The notes beneath the pieces are model-generated. The model was not told where the DNA came from. It saw only the letters and a list, made by a program, of their open reading frames with translations, and made no database searches. The position numbers and the translations under genes are program-made. From assembly GCA_038496445.1 (NCBI GenBank), contig JALMLS010000436.1, forward strand, positions 1 to 64,000: 64,000 nucleotides of DNA, written 5' to 3'. Every line of letters begins with the position of its first letter. Position 1 is the stretch's first letter. This document shows, piece by piece, positions 3,007 through 64,000 of the stretch. The DNA is from Trichosphaerium sp. ATCC 40318 (taxonomy: Eukaryota; Protista; Tubulinea).

Positions 3007-4688
3007 ATGGACAATACAGTAAATGATATTGACGATTGGATACCAGAACGCGTACTAAATAAAAGAACGTTGAAATCCGTACGAGCGAGAATAGTTTTTT
3101 GTTGACTATTTATACGCCTTAAAGGGCGCTATAGAGTATTTAGTAAAGTGGGAAGGTTGGAACGTTGAACACGCTACTTGGGAGGTAAGTATAACATTTT
3201 TTGGCTTTATATCGCTATAAACTACTTATTTCGCTCAAGCACGAAGACGACCTTGAATGTGACATACTTTTATGTAAATTCAACTTAGAACAGCGGAAAA
3301 AAGCTCAAACGTCAAAACAACAACGCAAACACAGCAACGACGCTCGTACTATACGTAAAAAGCATGAAAAACAGTTTGTATACTCACGTGAGGCTATTTT
3401 CGGAAATCTTAATGTCCAGCAATCGAAAAAACAGAATCAAGAACGATCATACCAAGAAATATGGCAAAACATTGATCACTCGAAGATGTTTTCAAAGTAC
3501 CCTCGCAAAGGCGATTACATGCTTTCTTTTGAACCAACAGAACCAGAAAAGTACTTGCCTGTTCTAGCACAGTATGGGTTTGTAGTTATAAGAGTATTAA
3601 ACAAAGAAGAGTGTGTTAAATCTCAAAAAGCACTTTTTGAAGAAGCCAATGAAGATGCTTGTTCTCATCAGGAAGTCAAGCTTGATCGCTCAAAACCTTG
3701 TACATGGGAAACAAAGAACTGGCCTTCGGGTAGTAAGTATTTATTCAGACGACCTGCATTACATAAGGTAGCATTTGAGAATAGAATAAAAAAAACAATT
3801 TATCGGACTTTTTGTGAGATTCATGGAACAAAAAAGTTATGGACTACTATAGACTATTGGGGTGTTATGAGAGGAACAAAGAACCTTGATTTTGTTGGAT
3901 CAGAAACTAAAAAAGAGAGACCCGCCTGGAAATTTAATCTTCAACTTCATTGGGACTTGAATCCATGGCAGTAAGAAATAGCCAAGTAATTCTCTGAACC
4001 AATTTATAACGGTTTTTTTAAGGTACATGGAAGAAGTTACAGATGGCTTGACCGCAAGATACCAAGCTCTTATCGCTTTAGGTACGCACATACATTGAAA
4101 ACTAATAATTGAATATTCAAGTATTAACTTGCAAATGATAGACGATTGCCCTGAAGAAGTTGGTGGATTTCTAACTGTTCCCGGATCAACAAGGTTTTTG
4201 AACAAGTGGTAAGTTTTTTTTACCACGTGTTTTTGCTTAACCAAGATTTTTCAGGCGAAATACACATATTAAACCACACAATAAGAATATATTAACACGT
4301 GTACCGCCATCAGACCCAATACAACAGTACACGCAAAGAGTAAGATATTGTCCTTCTGAAATTTTGTTGTACTTTTAACAGTGCTTCCTCTTTGTTGGCT
4401 TTGTGTTTACCGTTTTGTGTTTACCGTTTTGTATAGGTGCCTTTACGTGCAGGAGAGATGGTTATTTGGAATTCAGGACAAGCACACGCTAACTATGGAA
4501 ACACTTCGAATAAAATGAGATTGATTCAATTTGTAAAGATGATTCCTGCAAAAGATGAATGCTATATTCGTGAAAGGCGCACAGCAAAAAGAACACTTGA
4601 TGAGATTCCTGAATATAGACCATATGTTGATAGACTTGGTCTTGATGATTTTGGACTTAAACTATTTGGTTTAAAAGATTGGGAGTAA
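3007..4688 (+). CDS. Chromodomain fused to PhyH-like 2OG-Fe(II) dioxygenase
   Basis: Spliced exons 3007-3078, 3125-3184, 3240-: WIPERVLNKR/GAIEYLVKWEGWNVEHATWE/HEDDLEC is a chromodomain; downstream YGFVVI, LHWDLNPW (HxD), RYQALIAL, VGGFLTVPGS, PLRAGEMVIWNSGQAHAN..RLIQF are PhyH-family motifs. Confidence 0.8.
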
Positions 4689-19832: not shown

Positions 19833-20906
19833 CTACCAGTTTGTTATTATCTCATTTGCACCAGACAAAAACGTGATGCCCTTACTGGTCACTAATCTAC
19901 ATTCACATAAGCGGATAGTGTGAACTTGTGATAACGCTCTCAACCCTTCATCTGTTACATTTGTGCTAGATAAATCAATCGAATAGACACCTCCCAGTGC
20001 TTTTATACCAACATCAGTTACACTTGTTTCTTGTAAAGAAATATGATGTGCACCAGCCAATGCTTTAATGCCTTCATCTGTTATACGTATGCACCCATCC
20101 AACACAATAGTGTGTACACCTGCTATCGCCTTCAAACTGTCATCTGTTACATTTGTTTCTGTTAAAACAATGCAATGTACACCTACCAATGATTTGATTC
20201 CTGTGTCTGTAATCAATTTACATCCCGACAAGATTATAGTATGTACACCTCTCAACGCCTCTAATCCTTCATCAGTAACACTTGTTCCTGATAAACCAAT
20301 CTCGTGTACACCTGCCAATGTCTTGATGCCTTTATCTGTTATTAACTCACAACAATTCAAATGGATAGTGTGTACACCAGCTAGTTCTATCAAACCTTTA
20401 TCCGTTACTTTTGTATAACTCAAATGGATCTCATGTACACCTGCTAGCAGTTTTAATCCTTCATCTGTAACTCTCGTTTGTACTAAGGCAATCGTATGTA
20501 CACCTGCAAGTGCCTTTAATCCTTCATCAGTCACAAGTGATCCAGATAAATCAATGTCATGTACACCGGCCAATGAACTGATGCCTTCGTCTGTTATTTT
20601 TAGACAATAGTTCAGTTTGATTGTATGTACACCTCCAAGCAAACGCAAGAGGCTGTCGTTCGCGAAATATGAATTTAAGATAAGCGTCGTGTTTTTTAGT
20701 AACAAAGGACGTGCAGCAAGCATTCTCATATCGTTTGGGCTTTCAACTTTGATTTCATTGTATCCAACGTGTTTATGGACAATATCTCTTAAATAGCGGC
20801 ATGTTTGGGCTGAACGAAGTGCAAACTTTCCCTGTTTAAGAATATGAACTATTAATTCGACTGGGAGCTCAATAAGGTCGAATATATGCTCTGTGTATTC
20901 TTGCAT
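19833..20906 (-). CDS. F-box + leucine-rich repeat protein (intronless)
   Basis: LIELPVELIVHIL F-box; about 11 regular 22-24 aa LRRs (vTDEGLkaLaGVHtIdLs); first ATG is MQEYTEH. Confidence 0.9.
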   Translation of the reverse strand: MQEYTEHIFDLIELPVELIVHILKQGKFALRSAQTCRYLRDIVHKHVGYNEIKVESPNDMRMLAARPLLLKNTTLILNSYFANDSLLRLLGGVHTIKLNYCLKITDEGISSLAGVHDIDLSGSLVTDEGLKALAGVHTIALVQTRVTDEGLKLLAGVHEIHLSYTKVTDKGLIELAGVHTIHLNCCELITDKGIKTLAGVHEIGLSGTSVTDEGLEALRGVHTIILSGCKLITDTGIKSLVGVHCIVLTETNVTDDSLKAIAGVHTIVLDGCIRITDEGIKALAGAHHISLQETSVTDVGIKALGGVYSIDLSSTNVTDEGLRALSQVHTIRLCECRLVTSKGITFLSGANEIITNW

Positions 20907-21137
20907 CTCTGTATACGCTGCTTCTGTATGAGATAAGTGAATAATACTAGCCACGTTGATAATATGAAGTCAAAGCAAAGTCAAACATTATTCTTGCTTA
21001 ATACTGAAATAAAGCCGGAAGCCCAAATGTGTAGAATTTTGTTCGCCACTACCTACCGTCCATTATGACGTAACCGTCAAAAAGAATATTTACTGGACAG
21101 TGTCACATTGTTTCATTCTCGTACTAGCACCCCGAAA

Positions 21138-22295: not shown

Positions 22296-23669
22296 CTACA
22301 TCACAAGCTCATCTATACCATTTATGTAGGTACGTTGTGTCTTTATGTCCACTTTCATACCATTTACGTAGGTATATTGGATCTTTAATTGTCCATTTTC
22401 ATACCACTTGTTATATTCTCCTTCAAGCTTACCTTTGATAAAATTACACTGACTCTCTAATTGGCTGTTTTCATACCACTCCTTTTTTTCTCCTTCTTCT
22501 TTACCATTGATAAAATTACACTGAATATATAATTGTCCATTTTCATACCACTCATTATATTCTCCTTCTTTTTTACCATTTACGTAGGTATATTGGAGCT
22601 TTAATTGTCCATTTTCATACCACTCGTTATATTCTCCTTCAAGCTTACCTTTGATAAAAGTACACTGAACATTTAATTGGCTGTTTTCATACCACTCCTT
22701 AGATTCTCCATGTTGCTTGTCATTGATAAAGACACACTGTCTCTCCAGTTTTCCGTTTTTATGCCATTCCTGAAATACTCCTTCCTTTTTACCCTTGACA
22801 TAAGTAGTTTGGAACCACAATTCCCCAGTTATGTACCACCCTTTGTATTCTCCTTGTAGCTTGCCGTTAACATAAGTACATTGACTTTGCAATTCACTAT
22901 TTCCCTTGTTTTTTTCCTCATGCTTGTCAAAGATGTTTAACCGTTCTAGTTTATGCCATTCCTTATATTCCCCTTCTTTTTTGCCCTTGATGTAGTTACA
23001 CTGGTTTCGCAATTGACCATTATTATACCACTCCTTATATTCCCCTTCTATTTTGCCCTTGATGTTATTACACTTGATCCGCAATTGACCATTTTTATGC
23101 CACTCCTTATATTCCCCTTCTAGTTTGTCCTTGCTGTAGTTACACTGGTTCTGCAATTGACCATTTTTATACCACTGCTTGTGTTCCCCTTCTTTTTTGC
23201 CCTTGATGTAATTACTCTGGATCTGCAATTGGCTTTTAATACCAAACCAGCTATTTCTGTATTCATGCCACTCTTTATATTCTCCTTCTATCTCACCATC
23301 GACATAAGTAAATTGCTTATTCAATTGCCCATTGGAGCACCAACGATTGTACTCTCCATGTTTTAGACCATGTTTCCAATACTCTTGCTGTACAACTTTG
23401 TTCTTTACTCTTCGAACCCATTTTCCGTGCTTTTTCATCTCACCATCAAACCTTATTGTCGTTGCCGCCTGTTTCGAAAGAAGTGGCCAATTTAAATACA
23501 CGGACCAGTCCAAATCGATAATATCAAGCTGAAGCTCAACTGGAAGGTGTAATAGGCGGCAACCACGTGATTGTACAGTAAATCCCTGTTTGTGTGTTGT
23601 TAGATACTACGTTTACGATTAAAAGGATTCTAGTACGTTGGATGGGATAATTTCGGGAGATTTGAGCAT
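22296..23669 (-). CDS. F-box-like + MORN-variant repeat protein
   Basis: Exon1 MLKSPEIIPSN spliced to GFTVQSRGCRLLHLPVELQLDIID (F-box-like); then many GEYKEWYENGQL..QC.Y.NGK repeats in one long exon. Confidence 0.85.
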
Positions 23670-27470: not shown

Positions 27471-28722
27471 TTACAAGTATTGAAGGTTACAAAATGCGAC
27501 AATACATAAAAAGTAAACCAAACAAACAGAGGAAGCCAATTTTACAGAGCTTGACGCTACATTGGTTGGTGCTGTTGTAGGAGTCGAAGAAGCTGTTAGT
27601 GTTGTTGTTGATTGAGTTGGAGCTAGCGTAGAAGGTTGTTGTGTGGTCAAAGTTATTGGAACAATAGGAGCTGAAGTACTTGGAGAAAGGGTTGATGGAG
27701 ATAAAGTAGTTGGAAACTTGGTCACAGGAGACAGCGTTGTAGGAGGTAGCGTAGTAGGAGGAAGTGTTGTAGGAGCTACTGTAGTTGGAAAAGCAGTAGT
27801 AGGAGTCAAGGTAGTAGGAGGTAGCGTTGTAGGAGGTAGCGTGGTAGGAGGTAGTGTAGTAGGAGGTAGTGTGGTAGGAGGCAGCGTGGTAGGAGGTAGC
27901 GTTGTAGGAGGTAGTGTGGTAGGAGGTAGTGTTGTAGGAGGTAGCGTTGTAGGAGGTAGCGTTGTGGGTGGTAGTGTGGTAGGTGGAAGTGTTGTAGGAG
28001 CTAGCGTTGTAGGAGGTAGTGTGGTAGGAGGAAGTGTTGTAGGTGCTATCGTGGTAGGAGGTATAGGCACGTACAGAAATTCAGAACTGAAGCTACCCTG
28101 TGGGATGAATTGAGGTTTAAGTGTAAAACTAAGAATATCAGAATTAAAGAAGAAAGCACTAAACATACGAGAATGTGGTGCGACAGCTAAGTTAGACGAC
28201 TTTAGATATAACCCTAACAAATCAAATTAAAGAGGAGGCGATAAACTAACTTAGATGCACGAAAACGTACCTGTAACAATAGCATTATTCATCACACAAG
28301 TAAATATTAAGTCAAAGTCGTTATTCCTAGGTTGATTTTCATTCATCGTGAGGGTTGTTGATGTTGAATCTATGTTTAGTTCAATTGCATAATTACTAAT
28401 CGGGGCAAAATACTCCGTTGCACTATCAGATACTATGAAGTTTGGGTTGTTTGGTTCAGATGAGTTATCAAGTAAATCAAAAAAAGCACCAGCTTGTACT
28501 ATTGCAGTGCATCTACCACCTTCACCAACATCTAAAAAGAATTAGTTTTATTTATTGCACTAGTCTTCTGTGTGTCATGGTAACAGCAACTATATTGAAC
28601 CCACACCATAACTGTGGTGTTCAAAAAGCTGACGTGACCCACACTTTAGTTGTCGTACTTAGTGATAGCGTTAGAGCACATAGCGTTGATAGTATTAGAC
28701 AATATAGACTTGCTTTAATCAT
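27471..28722 (-). CDS. PPTTL-repeat mucin-like, probably GPI-anchored surface protein, copy A
   Basis: Signal peptide MIKASLYCLILSTLCALTLS; small globular N-domain; long (L/F)PPTT repeat stalk; C-terminal ASSS + hydrophobic tail. Confidence 0.8.
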
Positions 28723-31234: not shown

Positions 31235-32389
31235 TTACAAGTATTGAAGGAGGTTACAAAATGCGACAATACATAAAAAGTAAACCAAACAAACAGAGGA
31301 AGCCAATTTTACAGAGCTTGATGCTTCATTGGTTGGTGCTGTTGTAGGAGTCGAAGAAGCTGTTAGTGTTGTTGTTGATTGAATTGGAGCTAGCGTAGAA
31401 GGTTGTGTGGTCAAAGTTATTGGAACAATAGGAGCTGAAGTACTTGGAGAAAGGGTTGATGGAGATAAAGTAGTTGGAGAGTTGGTCACAGGAAACAGCG
31501 TTGTAGGAGCTACTGTAGTTGGAAAAGCAGTAGTAGGAGTCAATGTAGTAGGATGTAGCGTTGTAGGAGGTAGCGTTGTAGGAGGTAGCGTTGTAGGCGG
31601 TAGCGTTGTAGGAGGAAGTGTTGTAGGAGGTAGTGTGGTAGGAGGAAGTGTAGTAGGCGGAAGTGTTGTAGGAGGAAGTGTTGTAGGTGCTGTCGTGGTA
31701 AGAGGTATAGGCACGTACAGAAATTCAGCACTGAAGTTACTCAGTGGGATGAATTGAGGTTTAAGTGTAAAACTAAGAATATCAGAATTAAAAAGAAGAA
31801 AGTGCTAAACATACGAGAATGTTGTAGTATTGAAGGTAATATCTGCCGGTGCGACAGGTAAATTAGACGACTTTAGATATAACCCTAACAAATCAAATTA
31901 AAGAGGAGGCGATAAACTAACTTAGATGCACAAAAACGTACCTGTAACAATAGCATTATTCATCACACAAGTAAATAGTATGTCGGTGTTTAGATTCCTA
32001 GATCGTGTTTGAAACAACGAGAAGGTTGTTGATGTTGAATCTATGTTTAGTTAATACACATATCTACCAACTGGGGCTATATACTCCGTTGCACTATCAG
32101 ATACTATGAAGTTTGGGTTGTTTGGTTCCAGAGAGGGGCTAAGCACATTTATAGTAGAACCATCTATTATTGCAGTGCATTTACCACCTTCGCCAACATC
32201 TAAAAAGAATTAGTTTTCTTTATTGCACTCCTTCTTTGTGTCAAGGTAACAGCACTATATCGAACCCACAGCAAAACTGCCGAGTGTTCAAAAAGCTGAC
32301 CTTACCCACACTTTAGTTGTCGTACTTAGTGATATCGTTAGAGCACATAGCGTTGATAGTATTAGACAATATAGAGTTGCTTTAATCAT
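31235..32389 (-). pseudogene. PPTTL-repeat surface protein, copy B, with an in-frame stop
   Basis: Same exon structure as copies A and C; TAA at 32051-32053 where copies A and C have GAA. Confidence 0.75.
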
Positions 32390-40544: not shown

Positions 40545-41663
40545 ATGATTAAAGCAACTCTATATTGTCTAATACTATCAACGTTATGTACTCTAACGCT
40601 ATCACTAAGTACGACAACTAAAGTGTAGGTAAGGTCAGCTTTTTGAACACTCGGCAGTTATGCTGTGGGTTCGATATAGTTGCTGTTACCTTGACACAAA
40701 GAAGGCTAGTGCAATAAAGAAAACTAATTCTTTTTAGATGTTGGCGAAGGTGGTAAATGCACTGCAATAATAGATGGTTCTTCTATTAATGTGCTTAGCC
40801 CCTCTCTGGAACCAAACAACCCAAACTTCATAGTATCTGATAGTGCAACGGAGTATATAGCCCCAGTTAGTAGTTATGTGTATGAACTAAACATAGATTC
40901 AACATCAACAACCTTCTCGTTGTTTCAAACACGATCTAGGAATCTAAACAGCGACATACTATTTACTTGTGTGATGAATAATGCTATTGTTACAGGTACG
41001 TTTTTGTGCATCTAAGTTAGTTTATCGCCTCCTCTTTAATTTGATTTGTTAGGGTTATATCTAAAGTCATCTAATTTACCTGTCGCACCAGCAGATATTA
41101 CCTTCAATACTACAACATTCTCGTATGTTTAGCGCTTTCTTCTTTTTAATTCTAATATTCTTAGTTTTACACTTAAACCTCAATTCATCCCACCGAGTAA
41201 CTTCAGTGCTGAATTTCTGTATGTGCCTATACCTCTTGCCACGATAGCACCTACAACACTTCCTCCTACCACACTACCTCCTACAACACTTCCGCCTACT
41301 ACACTTCCTCCTACCACACTACCTCCTACAACGCTACCGCCTACAACGCTACCTCCTACTACCTTGAATCCTACTACTGCTCTTCCAACTACAGTAGCTC
41401 CGACAACGCTGTCTCCTGTGACCAAGTCTCCAACTACTTTATCTCCATCAACCCTCTCTCCAAGTACTTCAGCTCCTATTGTTCCAATAACTTTGACCAC
41501 ACAACAACCTTCTACACTAGCTCCAACTCAATCAACAACAACACTAACAGCTTCTTCGACTCCTACAACAGCACCAACCAATGTAGCATCAAGCTCTGTA
41601 AAATTGGCTTCCTCTGTTTGTTTGGTTTTCTTTTTATGTATTATGTATTGTCGCATTTTGTAA
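40545..41663 (+). CDS. PPTTL-repeat surface protein, copy C
   Basis: Intact spliced frame; a small duplication near the 3' end changes the last residues to MYCRIL*. Confidence 0.8.
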
Positions 41664-56799: not shown

Positions 56800-58713
56800 C
56801 TATTGGAGTACTTTTCTGCCATTCTTCATAACACATTGTAGTGTTAGTTTTCCATTTTGATCCCATTCTTTGTACTCACCGTTATCTAAGTTATTCCTCA
56901 TCATACATTGAATACTTATTTGACCATTCTCATACCATTCTTTGTACTCTCCTTCATACTTTGAGTTCACACAGTAGCATTGTATACATAAATTCCCGTT
57001 TTGGTACCATTCCTTGTACTCTCCTTCTTTCTTACCTCTCTTTGAAGAGTGCTCACAACGAAGTTGACCACATTCATACCACATCCTAGCTAAACCTTCA
57101 GCTTGTCCATTGACACGAGTCAAGCATCGTTTCATTTGTCCATTGGGGTACCATTCTTTTTCTTCTCCATGAGGAATACTGTCCTTTACATAAAACTGTA
57201 AAAACAACTGTCCATTCCTGTGCCAACTTTTTACTTCGCCTTGTACTTTGTCATTCCATCGGTAGAGGCACTTTGACACTTGTCCATTATCATAGAACTC
57301 TTCATACTTTCCTGCAGTTTTTCCATTCTCTGCTGCATACCGTACTTGTAGTTTACCATTTTCATACCATTGCCTACACTCTCCATGTTTTAAGCCGTGT
57401 TTCCAAAATCGTTGAGATGACATCTGTCCACTACTGTACCAGCAATCATGTTCTCCTTCTTTTTTTCCATTGCGTATAGTATAAACCTGTTTCATTTGTC
57501 CATTTTCATACCACTCTTCCACTAATCCTTCCATCACATCATTGATATAACGTACACACAACGCAAGTTGTGTATTTTCATGCCACTGCTTGTATTTACC
57601 ATTCTTCTTTCCGTTCTTGTACTCGCAACTTTTTATCTTATTCCCATCTTTATACATGACATTCTTGCCATCCGGTATGCCATTCTTTACCTCAAGACTA
57701 CTTGTAATTTGTCCATCCTCATCCCACTTTTTCACAATACCATAAGGCCTACCATTGCAACAGAATCTTTCGGCTTTTCTTGTTCCATTTTCGTGGTAGT
57801 GCGTTTCTTTTAGACATTGCATGCCATGTATAATTTCCAAGTTGCCTTCTTTGATCATTTGTTGGTTATAGCAATCATCTGTGCTATCTTCGAAGAATAA
57901 ACAAGATTTAAGGTTCCCATTCTCATAATATTCTTTCTTAAACCGCACTATTTTATTGCAATGAACAAAGAAGTGTATCTTTAGTTTGCCATTTTTATAC
58001 CACATTTTTACTTCACCTTCTGATACTCCATTGTTTACACTGATAGAGGCTTCCATATTACCATTTTCATACCACTTTTGGAGTATTCCTTCGCACTTGT
58101 CATTTTTACACCAGCCTTGTTCAGATATCTGTCCGTTTTCATACCACTTTTGGAGCTTACCGATCTTCTTGCCATGTTCATACAAGCAATGGAATGCAAT
58201 CTGTCCGTTCGAGTACCACTGTTTTCTCTCTCCATGGAACTCGTTATTCAGGAAGAACACTTCATGATGCAGCTGCCCATTTTCATGCCACCACAATCCT
58301 TTTCCTGTTGCCTTTCCATACTCATGGTAGTAATGCACCTCAAGTTGTCCGTTTTTATACCAGTCTTTCGACTCACCCACAGGTAGTTGAATCATGGCCT
58401 TTAACTCTCCTGTTGAATACCACTGCTTCCAGGTACCCTTTTTTCTAAAGTCATTCGTAAAATGAGTGTTTTTAGCAGCTGCAGCAGACAGTAGGTGATA
58501 TTTTATGAACACTTCTTTGTCGAGCGAGCATATGGAACATTGAATATCGCTTGGTAATTGTGTCAGAAGACCATGTGATACTGAACGAGCTAAAGAATAA
58601 AACTTAGCCACTAAAAATACGAGAAAGTTATAGGTACGCACCGTGTATTCTCTGTATTTTCTTTTGTAAGGTTTGCATAAGTAATACCAAGAATTGTTCC
58701 AACGTGTCAACAA
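56800..58713 (-). CDS. F-box-like + MORN-variant repeat protein (true start uncertain)
   Basis: LLTQLPSDIQCSI F-box-like motif; about 20 GE.KEWYENGQL repeats in an uninterrupted ORF. Confidence 0.85.
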   Translation of the reverse strand: MLTRWNNSWYYLCKPYKRKYREYTVRTYNFLVFLVAKFYSLARSVSHGLLTQLPSDIQCSICSLDKEVFIKYHLLSAAAAKNTHFTNDFRKKGTWKQWYSTGELKAMIQLPVGESKDWYKNGQLEVHYYHEYGKATGKGLWWHENGQLHHEVFFLNNEFHGERKQWYSNGQIAFHCLYEHGKKIGKLQKWYENGQISEQGWCKNDKCEGILQKWYENGNMEASISVNNGVSEGEVKMWYKNGKLKIHFFVHCNKIVRFKKEYYENGNLKSCLFFEDSTDDCYNQQMIKEGNLEIIHGMQCLKETHYHENGTRKAERFCCNGRPYGIVKKWDEDGQITSSLEVKNGIPDGKNVMYKDGNKIKSCEYKNGKKNGKYKQWHENTQLALCVRYINDVMEGLVEEWYENGQMKQVYTIRNGKKEGEHDCWYSSGQMSSQRFWKHGLKHGECRQWYENGKLQVRYAAENGKTAGKYEEFYDNGQVSKCLYRWNDKVQGEVKSWHRNGQLFLQFYVKDSIPHGEEKEWYPNGQMKRCLTRVNGQAEGLARMWYECGQLRCEHSSKRGKKEGEYKEWYQNGNLCIQCYCVNSKYEGEYKEWYENGQISIQCMMRNNLDNGEYKEWDQNGKLTLQCVMKNGRKVLQ

Positions 58714-62424: not shown

Positions 62425-62898
62425 TTAGCGTCTGATTTTTTGTACAAGTTTTGTAGTAGAAATATCGGTACAGTCATGTCTGATGTAAATAACTTTCACC
62501 TTATTCTCATCCAACCATGCCTTCTCTTCCTTGTTTATATTCTCAACGTTATAATCTGATCCTTTAGTCAAGAAATGAGGGTATATAAGAGGAAATGTAT
62601 TCAGCAAGTTAGGTTCGTTAAAAATATACACAAAGTCGACGCATCTCAGCGAAGTTAACATTCGTGCTCTATACTTCTGGTTCACAACAGGTCTCTCTGG
62701 CCCTTTTATCTTCGATACAGATTCATCAGAGTTTATAGAAACAACCAGAACATCTCCAAGCTTCGAAGCTGCTTCAAGATATGCCACGTGACCAGCATGA
62801 AGCATATCAAAGCATCCAGCTGCCATTGTAACGGTTTTACCTTCTTTTTTTACTCTTGAAATTTCATCTTTTAGTTGTTGTTTTGTTTGTAGAAGCAT
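62425..62898 (-). CDS. Cytidylyltransferase-family nucleotidyltransferase, RfaE domain II/HldC-like (intronless)
   Basis: GCFDMLHAGH (HxGH); GDVLVVSINSDESVSKIKGPERP; RARML..LRCVDFV; KGSDY; C-terminal ISTT. Confidence 0.88.
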   Translation of the reverse strand: MLLQTKQQLKDEISRVKKEGKTVTMAAGCFDMLHAGHVAYLEAASKLGDVLVVSINSDESVSKIKGPERPVVNQKYRARMLTSLRCVDFVYIFNEPNLLNTFPLIYPHFLTKGSDYNVENINKEEKAWLDENKVKVIYIRHDCTDISTTKLVQKIRR

Positions 62899-64000
62899 TT
62901 TGTTAATGCGGATACAGATCACTTTCATAGATTTGAGAAATCAGTTGACGTCCTGTTTCGTTCAGTAAATGATGTCATAAAACTACCAAAACCTCCGATA
63001 TCGTACAACGGTAGTTTTCGTGGTATTCATACCGTGATTGCGAACAAATATACAAATACGTAGGTACTAAGTGACAGAAGCAAGAGAATAACTCCGCCGT
63101 TACCTTTTTTCTTTATTTTACACGTGTTGTATAATTCCATTTTTTCTCGTTTTATTTACATGACCGGCACCTATAGCTCAAATCTTTACCCGAAATTAAA
63201 CGTCATTTTTTTCTATTGGTGCTTGCAAAGCTTGGAAGCACGTGATAAAAATATGTTGTGGTTTTGAGATGTACTTCTTATTTCTTGCTCTTTAGATATT
63301 CACTCGTTTATTTAGGTGGAAAAGCTGATACAAAAGACTGCTCATGGTGGTGTACGGTCCAAATGAGACTGTTAGATATTTTACAAAGACATACAAACAA
63401 TTGTTCTTTGACACCTTTTGCAAAAGCATCTTTTTTTTGGAAAGAAGTAACTTGTTTATTGTTTCTTAGGCTCTTTATGTGCGCGCCCAATTACAAAATT
63501 GGCTAAATGATAGTAAAGAAAGCTTATTAAGTGCTGTAGAACAATAAACAACTTTATATTTCTACCTATCGTCAAGTTTATGCACCCTTGCAAGTACTTT
63601 AAACGCTTTTGTTTATTTGGGAAGGCGATCTCGAGGTTTTTTTTGATGAGATACGTGCTTCTTTGAATAGCTTTTTTAGCCTTTTTTTTGTTTTAATCCA
63701 ATTCTATCACTTCTCTTGTTACTGCAATCTTTGATGAAAGTGCCCTGTTTTAACAATACTGTCTATGCAATGTCAAGTACCTTCGTAGTTACAATCTGTC
63801 AAATAAACAGCGTAATAATGTTTGACTAACGGCCGTTTTATTCTCCGAAGTAGGACTGTAATGACATTATTACAAACTTCTAATGCAACAATCCTTGGTG
63901 GCTTTTTGCCAATGAATATCGCGTTCTTTTAACATGCCAACAGGGGATTGTAAACGCTACTATGTCGCGAATCAACTGTTTTTACAAACAACTTGTAACC

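What the first reader, a model, noticed from the sequence alone, without database searches (positions are those of the whole stretch)
3007..4688. Chromodomain fused to a PhyH-type 2OG-Fe(II) dioxygenase
Seen: two tiny 5' exons missed by the ORF track splice in frame to give a chromodomain with aromatic-cage-like residues (W...KWEGW), followed by a basic linker and a PhyH-like domain with HWD...H metal ligands. Known: chromatin 2OG oxygenases are normally JmjC, TET/JBP or AlkB, while PhyH enzymes act mainly on small molecules. Inference: a non-JmjC chromatin-targeted hydroxylase or demethylase.
Basis: partly seen in the sequence, partly recalled or inferred. Interest (0 to 1): 0.72.

Follow-up and report, generated by a model that had tools for sequence, protein, structure and literature searches.

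The report
Chromodomain fused to PhyH-type oxygenase
An amoeba gene joins a chromatin "reader" of methylated lysine to an iron/2-oxoglutarate oxygenase of a class so far known only from small-molecule chemistry. None of about 150 relatives checked has this combination, but expression, splicing and substrate are all untested.

Summary
Window 3007-4688 (+) gives a clean seven-exon model: six GT..AG introns of 46-97 nt, no stop, 441 aa.

- **Chromodomain.** Exon 2 alone (20 aa) passes Pfam's Chromo cut-off and aligns best to CBX6/7/8 chromodomains. W11, W33 and W36 sit where the aromatic cage lies.
- **Evidence for the fusion.** Exon 3 is one open frame holding the likely last chromodomain helix, a basic linker and the first half of the oxygenase. 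It has no ATG before M127. A conserved family motif lies upstream of M127, so the start codon must come from the small 5' exons.
- **Oxygenase.** The domain belongs to a large uncharacterised PhyH clade. Its nearest solved folds are Gig2/DUF1479 and YbiU. All 19 near-invariant family residues are kept (H281, D283, H375, R386 and others).
- **Relatives.** The sister is a chromo-less Trichosphaerium transcript (56% identity). None of 125 relatives scanned with Pfam has a chromodomain, and no paper describes the fusion.
- **Gaps.** No RNA evidence could be obtained, and the substrate is unknown.

The scan had already noted this same fusion on at least five other pieces of this genome, one of them frameshifted. 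I rate it a new variant of a known kind (reader plus oxygenase), of moderate to high interest, with function inferred only.

The parts
3007..3078 (+). Exon 1 (aa 1-24). Start codon and first chromodomain strand, including W11, the candidate first aromatic-cage residue at 3037-3039.
   Evidence: It is the first ATG after an in-frame stop. The donor GTACGA resembles the homology-validated donor of intron 4. It gave no Pfam or PDB hit on its own because it is too short.
3079..3124 (+). Intron 1, 46 nt, GT..AG, phase 0.
   Evidence: If retained, the frame stops at 3103-3105 (ORF 3007..3105).
3125..3184 (+). Exon 2 (aa 25-44). Chromodomain core with the KWEGW motif; W33 at 3149-3151 and W36 at 3158-3160.
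   Evidence: Pfam Chromo 30.7 bits against a cut-off of 25.1. Aligns to CBX6/8/7/2/4, CHD1 and HP1 chromodomains, best E 8e-6.
3185..3239 (+). Intron 2, 55 nt, GTAAGT..AG, phase 0.
3240..3293 (+). Start of exon 3 (aa 45-62). Candidate C-terminal helix of the chromodomain (motif E-D-D-L-E-C-x-x-L-L-x-x-F).
   Evidence: It lies in the same open frame and the same exon as the oxygenase. The motif-level likeness to HP1-type chromodomains is from memory. No tool hit was obtained.
3294..3443 (+). Basic linker (aa 63-112), inside exon 3.
   Evidence: Residues 60-125 hold 15 K/R against 7 D/E. No word-sharing protein was found in the 5.8-billion-cluster collection.
3444..4685 (+). PhyH/Gig2-like 2OG/Fe(II) oxygenase domain (aa 113-441). 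It spans the rest of exon 3 and exons 4-7, starting at the conserved R-x-x-E-x-W motif. Key residues: H281 (3948-3950), D283 (3954-3956), H375 (4485-4487), R386 (4518-4520).
   Evidence: 56% identity to the Trichosphaerium transcript P0001, which is PF05721-positive. All 19 near-invariant family residues are kept. The exon joins 3/4, 4/5, 5/6 and 6/7 are colinear with P0001.
3971..4022 (+). Intron 3, 52 nt.
   Evidence: the junction is colinear with P0001.
4082..4141 (+). Intron 4, 60 nt, donor GTACGC.
   Evidence: the junction is colinear with P0001.
4209..4254 (+). Intron 5, 46 nt.
   Evidence: the junction is colinear with P0001.
4340..4436 (+). Intron 6, 97 nt.
   Evidence: the junction is colinear with P0001.
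4686..4688 (+). Stop codon TAA.

Best explanation
This is an intact seven-exon nuclear gene of a Trichosphaerium-like marine amoeba. Its 441-aa product has three parts: an N-terminal HP1/Polycomb-type chromodomain with three tryptophans at the aromatic-cage positions, a roughly 50-residue basic linker, and a complete Fe(II)/2-oxoglutarate oxygenase.

The oxygenase belongs to a large uncharacterised PhyH-superfamily clade whose nearest solved folds are Gig2/DUF1479 and YbiU. The gene arose in this lineage by duplication of a chromo-less oxygenase gene that is still expressed in Trichosphaerium. The duplicate gained two small phase-0 exons and a 5' extension of the first oxygenase exon.

Inferred mechanism: the chromodomain docks the enzyme on methyl-lysine-marked chromatin. 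There the oxygenase uses Fe(II), 2OG and O2 to oxidise a chromatin-bound substrate. That substrate could be a protein side chain (hydroxylation, or demethylation via N-methyl hydroxylation) or a nucleic-acid base.

Shown: the gene structure, both domains, intact catalytic residues, the paralogy, and the absence of this architecture in relatives. Inferred: splicing and expression, methyl-lysine binding, nuclear location, and the substrate.
For: - **Gene model.** The model is in frame with canonical introns of the size typical for the published Trichosphaerium genome (mean 75 nt, GC 37.7% against 36.7% here).
- **Chromodomain.** Exon 2 passes Pfam Chromo on its own and aligns to CBX/HP1/CHD1 chromodomains.
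- **Single open frame.** Exon 3 runs from the chromodomain-helix motif into the oxygenase. It has no in-frame ATG before M127 (3486). The stretch is 82 stop-free codons, P about 0.007.
- **Start codon must be upstream.** The motif R-x-x-E-x-W...F-x-(R/K)-Y, conserved in many family members, lies upstream of M127 at aa 113-131. Translating it needs a start codon from an upstream exon.
- **Splice signals.** The donor of intron 1 (GTACG) matches the donor of intron 4, which homology validates.
- **Catalytic core.** H281, D283, H375, R386 and 15 further near-invariant residues are kept.
- **Fold.** The AF2 model of paralogue P0001 has pLDDT 92.7. Its best folds are Gig2 6akz (Z 22.6) and YbiU 4rgk (Z 22.3), then PhyH-type enzymes at Z 15-20.
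- **Paralogy.** In the ML tree the window protein is sister to Trichosphaerium P0001 (UFBoot 98 / SH-aLRT 90). P0001 is a complete ORF with upstream in-frame stops and no chromodomain.
- **Other fusions in the clade.** Relatives carry macromolecule-recognition modules: MJ1316 RNA-end domain in Reticulomyxa P0033, F-box in P0089, and Ank and TPR in others. Many have basic N-terminal tails.
- **Genomic context.** Neighbours are ordinary cellular genes with no transposon features.
Against: - **No RNA evidence.** No RNA run was listed. No transcript-derived protein closer than 56% identity was found at 141-450 aa or at 44-140 aa, or among 1.84 billion representatives. The Trichosphaerium MMETSP0405 transcriptome is in those collections. 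I could not show that it comes from the same strain as this window.
- **Chromodomain parts untested.** Exon 1 and the exon-3 helix gave no tool hit on their own. The spliced protein could not be submitted to Pfam, PDB or AlphaFold because it has no reference.
- **Small-molecule neighbours.** Every characterised structural neighbour acts on a small molecule.
- **Fast evolution.** The window protein's branch is twice as long as its paralogue's (0.71 against 0.32). An earlier scan note reports one frameshifted copy elsewhere. Relaxed constraint is therefore possible.
- **Alternative forms.** Skipping exon 2 also stays in frame, and M127 could start a chromo-less isoform.
Confidence: 0.5

Rival explanations
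1. The fusion is real but the enzyme is not a chromatin modifier. The oxygenase keeps an ancestral small-molecule or metabolite substrate. The chromodomain only places it in the nucleus or on a non-histone methylated partner. A precedent is CDYL, which brings an acyl-CoA enzyme fold to chromatin.
For: All characterised structural neighbours (PtlH, SptF, TlxJ, AsqJ, KanJ, EctD, PHYHD1, PHYH) act on small molecules or acyl-CoA. The catalytic residues are unchanged from the chromo-less paralogue. CDY/CDYL as a chromodomain plus crotonase-fold enzyme is established knowledge.
Against: The closest folds, Gig2 and YbiU, have no known substrate, so 'small molecule' is not established for this clade. 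Other clade members are fused to an RNA-end recognition domain or an F-box, which points to macromolecules.
Confidence: 0.2
2. Gene-model artefact. The chromodomain exons are not joined to the oxygenase in mature mRNA. They would be a dead remnant or a separate tiny transcript, and the oxygenase would be translated from M127 (3486) as a chromo-less protein like its relatives.
For: No transcript evidence exists. M127 lies only five residues before the conserved Y-P...S-F core, and several relatives start about there. All relatives lack a chromodomain.
Against: The frame stays open for 82 codons upstream of M127 (P about 0.007). The conserved R-x-x-E-x-W motif lies upstream of M127. The chromodomain-helix motif is in the same exon and frame as the oxygenase. 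Both 5' introns are canonical, phase 0 and of normal size. The start codon sits eight residues before the domain. Unchecked earlier scan notes report the same seven-exon structure in other copies.
Confidence: 0.12
3. A decaying young gene family. The fusion arose by duplication and exon capture but is not under selection for a chromatin role, and the copies are drifting towards pseudogenes.
For: The branch is twice as long as the paralogue's. One other copy is reported frameshifted in an A7 run (unchecked). There is no transcript in the collections searched.
Against: This copy has no stop or frameshift across 441 codons and six introns. All 19 near-invariant family residues and all three cage tryptophans are kept. 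A single-base change in a homopolymer in a long-read assembly may be a sequencing error.
Confidence: 0.13
4. Cargo or derivative of a mobile element. Chromodomains are common in Ty3/gypsy chromoviruses, and the gene is multi-copy in this genome.
For: At least five other copies are noted on other pieces. Transposons with cargo genes are noted in this genome (unchecked).
Against: There are no terminal repeats, no second copy and no transposase, integrase or RT gene near this copy. Its neighbours are ATG27-like, a sodium:solute symporter and an S10 carboxypeptidase. The chromodomain core is closest to cellular CBX/HP1 types. The oxygenase is sister to a cellular Trichosphaerium gene.
Confidence: 0.05

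Closest known systems
Trichosphaerium sp. ATCC 40318 transcript P0001 (MMETSP0405), a chromo-less PhyH-family protein
   Same: It is the sister in the tree, with 56% identity over the whole oxygenase domain, the same catalytic and near-invariant residues, and colinear exon joins.
   Different: It has no chromodomain. Its N-terminus is a 40-residue acidic-then-basic tail, and the ORF is closed by upstream in-frame stops.
Gig2 (DUF1479) of Candida albicans, PDB 6akz, and YbiU of Yersinia pestis, PDB 4rgk
   Same: These are the nearest solved folds to the paralogue's model: Z 22.6 with 278 aligned at 3.0 A, and Z 22.3 with 291 aligned at 3.8 A.
   Different: Identity is only 13-14%. The Pfam Gig2-like model is not matched by P0001 and is matched only weakly by 3 of 125 relatives. 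They have no reader domain and no known substrate.
PHYH, PHYHD1 and bacterial or fungal PhyH-type enzymes (EctD, KanJ, PtlH, SptF, AsqJ, TlxJ)
   Same: They share the Pfam family PF05721, the double-stranded beta-helix fold, the HxD...H triad and the distal Arg.
   Different: They act on small molecules or acyl-CoA and have no chromatin module. Identity is 10-21% and Z is 15-20.
Reader-plus-oxygenase chromatin enzymes: PHF8/KDM7 (PHD + JmjC) and KDM4 (Tudor + JmjC)
   Same: The logic is the same: a methyl-lysine reader is fused to a 2OG/Fe(II) oxygenase so that one mark directs oxidation nearby (established knowledge).
   Different: Their catalytic domain is JmjC, not PhyH, and their reader is PHD or Tudor, not chromo. 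No JmjC hit was found here.
CDY/CDYL (chromodomain + crotonase-fold acyl-CoA enzyme)
   Same: An N-terminal HP1-like chromodomain brings a fold from intermediary metabolism to chromatin (established knowledge).
   Different: The catalytic fold and chemistry differ: it is a hydratase and uses no metal or 2OG.
CBX6/7/8 (Polycomb-class) chromodomains
   Same: They give the best alignments of exon 2, including the K-W-x-G-W motif that carries two cage residues.
   Different: By my count from remembered CBX sequences, the window protein has one extra residue between the first cage residue and the K-W motif. It has W at all three cage positions. Its C-terminal partner is an enzyme rather than a Pc box.

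Membership tests
Chromodomain (Pfam PF00385) | Profile match above the curated cut-off | tested here: met
   Exon 2 alone scores 30.7 bits against a cut-off of 25.1, covering profile positions 18-34 of 53. The full spliced domain could not be submitted because it has no reference.
Chromodomain (Pfam PF00385) | The two aromatic-cage residues in the K-W-x-G-(W/Y/F) motif | tested here: met
   W33 and W36 align to the W and W of KWKGW in CBX6 and CBX8 (printed alignments). Their role as cage residues is established knowledge.
Chromodomain (Pfam PF00385) | First cage aromatic at the start of strand 1 | tested here: inconclusive
   W11 lies 22 residues before W33, against 21 in HP1/CBX as I remember them. 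Exon 1 alone gave no Pfam or PDB hit.
Chromodomain (Pfam PF00385) | C-terminal helix packing on the sheet | tested here: inconclusive
   The motif E-D-D-L-E-C-x-x-L-L-x-x-F follows T-W-E at the start of exon 3. The 22-aa piece gave no hit alone.
Chromodomain (Pfam PF00385) | Binding of methylated lysine | not testable with these tools
   This needs peptide arrays, ITC or a similar binding assay.
PhyH family of 2OG/Fe(II) oxygenases (Pfam PF05721) | Profile match above the curated cut-off | tested here: inconclusive
   Only pieces of the window protein could be scanned, and exon 7 scores 13.4 bits against a cut-off of 22. The 56%-identical paralogue scores 34.1 bits, and 113 of 125 relatives match.
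PhyH family of 2OG/Fe(II) oxygenases (Pfam PF05721) | HxD...H iron-binding triad | tested here: met
   H281, D283 and H375 fall in the near-invariant columns of 125-150 relatives.
PhyH family of 2OG/Fe(II) oxygenases (Pfam PF05721) | Basic residue binding the 2OG C5 carboxylate, downstream of the distal His | tested here: met
   R386 aligns to the near-invariant R313 of P0001. Its role is inferred from the family.
PhyH family of 2OG/Fe(II) oxygenases (Pfam PF05721) | Double-stranded beta-helix fold | tested here: met
   Tested on paralogue P0001, not on the window protein itself. The AF2 model has pLDDT 92.7, with Z 15-20 to many PhyH-type structures.
PhyH family of 2OG/Fe(II) oxygenases (Pfam PF05721) | 2OG-dependent oxidation activity | not testable with these tools
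   This needs an enzyme assay.
Gig2-like / DUF1479 (Pfam PF07350) | Profile match above the curated cut-off | tested here: not met
   There is no hit for the window pieces or for P0001. P0004 scores 19.7 bits against a cut-off of 27, and only 3 of 125 relatives match at E <= 0.001. It is the nearest fold only.
JmjC, TET/JBP and AlkB chromatin or nucleic-acid oxygenases | Profile match to the family domain | tested here: not met
   None of these families appears for the window pieces or among the families listed for the 125 relatives.

The most novel reading that the evidence does not exclude
This would be the first chromatin oxygenase of the PhyH/Gig2 class. A methyl-lysine reader would direct a non-JmjC, non-TET, non-AlkB 2OG enzyme to hydroxylate or demethylate histones, or to oxidise DNA or RNA, in marked chromatin. 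By extension, the whole uncharacterised clade would act on macromolecules rather than small molecules. Support for that extension: other members are fused to an RNA-end recognition domain, an F-box, ankyrin or TPR repeats, and many carry basic tails.
Probability: 0.25. Interest if true: 0.8.

Novelty: new variant of a known kind. Interest (0 to 1): 0.55.

Why it matters
All known chromatin and nucleic-acid 2OG oxygenases belong to the JmjC, TET/JBP or AlkB families. A PhyH/Gig2-class enzyme tied to a methyl-lysine reader would add a fourth catalytic lineage to chromatin oxidation.

It would also give a first functional handle on a large protein clade that has no known substrate. That clade has thousands of members in protists, fungi, algae and bacteria, and includes E. 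coli's unassigned YbiU type.

The fusion supplies a testable hypothesis: where the enzyme goes, and therefore what it may act on. If the chromodomain only relocates a metabolic enzyme, it would be a second, independent case of CDYL-like logic.

Tried and rejected
1. **RNA evidence.** The look-up of sequencing runs listed no RNA run, so read laying could not be used.
2. **Transcript-derived proteins.** Word searches with the exon-3 ORF (141-450 aa) and with the 80-aa linker (44-140 aa) found nothing closer than 56% identity.
3. **Metagenome contig scans.** They found no close copy. The control failed as well: the known Trichosphaerium transcript contig L001 is not in that collection, so this blank carries no weight.
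4. **Is MMETSP0405 the same strain as this window?** Exact look-ups of two single-exon ORFs found nothing (the first two used wrong minus-strand ends). A homology search with the 167-aa ORF at 62428-62928 gave no hit above 54% identity and none from a transcriptome source (MMETSP/EukProt). This remains unresolved.
5. **Exon 1 and the exon-3 helix against Pfam and PDB.** Both are too short and gave no hits.
6. **Scanning or folding the spliced 441-aa protein or its 65-aa chromodomain.** I left this out. A spliced sequence has no reference, and I did not type it in.
7. **Transposon origin.** Rejected for this copy.
8. **Giant-virus origin.** One viral-contig scan found no relative, at limited sensitivity. 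The tree places the gene with amoebozoan genes.
9. **Literature.** Four paper searches found no description of Chromo+PhyH and no substrate for DUF1479/YbiU. The held parts of the supplements to the Trichosphaerium genome paper list phytanoyl-CoA dioxygenase genes but no chromodomain term.
10. **NCBIfam.** No family was matched.
Full report
**What is in the sequence.**
Reading 3007-4688 on the + strand and joining seven exons gives a 1326-nt CDS of 441 codons with no internal stop. The exons are 3007-3078, 3125-3184, 3240-3970, 4023-4081, 4142-4208, 4255-4339 and 4437-4688. All six introns are GT..AG and 46-97 nt long.

Window GC is 36.7%. That and the intron sizes fit the published Trichosphaerium sp. 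draft genome (GC 37.7%, mean intron 75 nt; PMC10521059). Earlier notes of this scan also name Trichosphaerium as the organism. I did not prove identity myself. My best protein hit is a Trichosphaerium transcript, and the next ones are other Amoebozoa.

**The chromodomain.**
- Exon 2 is only 20 residues, yet on its own it scores 30.7 bits against Pfam Chromo (cut-off 25.1).
- It aligns over its full length to solved chromodomains of CBX6, CBX8, CBX7, CBX2, CBX4, CHD1 and HP1, best E 8e-6. Its K-W-E-G-W lies on their K-W-K-G-W.
- By established knowledge of HP1/Polycomb chromodomains, the two W of that motif are two of the three aromatic-cage residues. Here they are W33 and W36.
- The third cage position is at the start of the first strand. 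W11 in exon 1 sits 22 residues upstream of W33, against 21 in HP1/CBX as I remember them.
- After T-W-E, exon 3 opens with E-D-D-L-E-C-x-x-L-L-x-x-F. This looks like the HP1-type C-terminal helix.
- Exon 1 and this exon-3 head are too short to give hits alone, so these two parts are assigned by motif and spacing only.
- I could not scan or fold the spliced domain, because a spliced sequence has no reference and I did not type it in.

**Are the two domains really joined?**
There is no RNA evidence (see "What is missing"), but the sequence gives four arguments.
1. The likely chromodomain helix, the linker and the first half of the oxygenase lie in one exon and one open frame (ORF 3201-3974).
2. 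That frame has no ATG before M127 at 3486 and stays open for 82 codons upstream of it. The chance of that is about 0.007 at this window's stop frequency.
3. A motif conserved in many family members (R-x-x-E-x-W...F-x-R/K-Y) lies at aa 113-131. It begins upstream of M127 and runs just past it, so translating it needs a start codon from an upstream exon.
4. The two 5' introns are phase 0, of normal size, and use the same signals as the four 3' introns. The joins of those four are confirmed by colinearity with a homologous transcript.

Two caveats apply. Skipping exon 2 also stays in frame, and M127 could start a chromo-less isoform.

**The oxygenase.**
- The exon-3 ORF finds four transcript-derived proteins. 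The best is P0001, at 56% identity over the whole catalytic domain.
- P0001 matches Pfam PhyH (34.1 bits).
- A profile search of 1.84 billion representatives finds 2836 relatives at E <= 1e-3 and 334 at E <= 1e-30.
- In alignments of the best 125-150, nineteen positions are at least 90% conserved. All nineteen are kept in the window protein. They include H281 and D283 (HxD), H375 (distal His) and R386 (the likely 2OG-binding Arg).
- Sequence searches find no close solved structure (best EctD, E 0.007), and no NCBIfam model matches.
- An AlphaFold2 model of P0001 is confident (pLDDT 92.7, pTM 0.89).
- Foldseek gives only PhyH-type small-molecule enzymes, at TM (by query) 0.40-0.50.
- The exhaustive structural search puts Gig2/DUF1479 of Candida (6akz, Z 22.6) and YbiU (4rgk, Z 22.3) first. 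PhyH-type enzymes follow at Z 15-20, including PHYHD1 and PHYH.
- I found no paper giving a substrate for Gig2 or YbiU. Papers cataloguing E. coli genes that lack experimental evidence of function mention YbiU.

The domain is therefore PhyH-superfamily, apparently active, and of unknown substrate.

**Origin.**
- P0001 comes from the Trichosphaerium sp. ATCC 40318 transcriptome MMETSP0405.
- Its ORF is closed by in-frame stops upstream of the ATG, and it has no chromodomain.
- In a maximum-likelihood tree of 44 family members, the window protein is sister to P0001 (UFBoot 98 / SH-aLRT 90). Its branch is about twice as long (0.71 against 0.32).
- The next relatives are other amoebozoans: Nematostelium, Cavostelium, Balamuthia and Phalansterium.

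So the fusion is a lineage-specific duplicate that gained chromodomain exons.

**Is the architecture known?**
- None of the 150 best relatives matches the window's N-terminal 125 residues.
- Of 125 relatives scanned with Pfam, 113 match PhyH and none matches Chromo.
- The 17 related metagenome loci carry no chromodomain.
- ESM Atlas neighbours are all plain PhyH/Gig2-like clusters.
- Four paper searches found nothing on such a fusion.
- Earlier notes of this scan report the same fusion on at least five other pieces of the same genome. One copy is called intact and one frameshifted in an A7 run. So it is a small gene family or a set of haplotigs, and the scan has seen it before. I could not read those copies.

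**Hints about function.**
- Within the same clade, other lineages have fused the oxygenase to macromolecule-recognition modules. Examples are an MJ1316 RNA cyclic-end recognition domain (Reticulomyxa ETO32717.1, P0033), an F-box (P0089), and ankyrin and TPR repeats.
- Many members, including P0001, Balamuthia P0005 and P0013, carry lysine/arginine-rich N-terminal tails. The window protein's linker is basic too, with 15 K/R against 7 D/E in aa 60-125.
- This is guilt by association. It makes a macromolecular, possibly nuclear, substrate plausible for the clade.
- Against it, every characterised structural neighbour acts on small molecules.

**Context.**
This copy sits between ordinary genes: an ATG27-like gene and a secreted Cys-rich ORF upstream on the minus strand, then a sodium:solute symporter and an S10 carboxypeptidase downstream. 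There is no second copy in the window, no long terminal repeats and no transposase. One viral-contig scan found no relative.

**What is missing.**
- No RNA run was listed.
- No transcript-derived protein closer than 56% exists in the collections, at any length tested.
- The metagenome contig scans are uninformative, because the control transcript contig is not in that collection.
- I could not establish that MMETSP0405 is the same strain as this window. Absence from that transcriptome is therefore weak evidence against expression.

**Verdict.**

My odds:
- about 0.85 that the fusion gene model is right;
- about 0.5 that the protein is a chromatin-targeted oxygenase as described;
- about 0.25 that it modifies histones or nucleic acids directly.

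I class it as a new variant of a known kind, a reader-plus-oxygenase with a catalytic family new to chromatin, and rate interest at 0.55.

Noticed in passing
window 62428-62928 (-): A single-exon 167-aa ORF of the bacterial RfaE domain II / heptose 1-phosphate adenylyltransferase type (PF01467). The best hits are 37-54% identical and come from metagenome, Logan and NCBI sources; all that carry a name are bacterial. No eukaryotic transcript was among 105 hits. It may be a laterally acquired gene.
   Followed up: partly
protein P0033 (Reticulomyxa filosa ETO32717.1) and P0089: Relatives of the same oxygenase clade are fused to an MJ1316 RNA cyclic-end recognition domain (P0033) and to an F-box (P0089). 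Other members carry ankyrin or TPR repeats. These fusions hint that this uncharacterised clade acts on macromolecules.
   Followed up: partly
protein P0005 (Balamuthia mandrillaris KAL6078392.1): This PhyH-family relative is named 'Sodium channel protein type 8 subunit alpha' in its NCBI record. That is evidently a wrong annotation.
   Followed up: no
window 27471-28220 (-), 31235-31714 (-), 41223-41663 (+): Three paralogous ORFs carry long P-P-T-T-L repeat arrays and a shared Ser/Thr-rich, hydrophobic C-terminus (mucin- or extensin-like). The first gives a sub-threshold Extensin_1 hit.
   Followed up: no
window 22296-23513 (-) and 56800-58713 (-): Two large MORN_2-repeat proteins (404 and 636 aa open stretches).
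   Followed up: no
window 19833-20954 (-): An F-box-like plus LRR_6 repeat protein in one long open stretch.
   Followed up: no
window 3079-3239: Skipping exon 2 (donor 3079, acceptor 3239) also keeps the frame. The result would be a protein without the chromodomain core, so an alternative isoform is possible.
   Followed up: no
PDB 8fnc chain 14 (structural match list): A subunit of the trypanosome RNA-editing RESC complex has a PhyH-like fold (Z 15.7 to the model). This shows that the fold also occurs in RNA-bound complexes.
   Followed up: no
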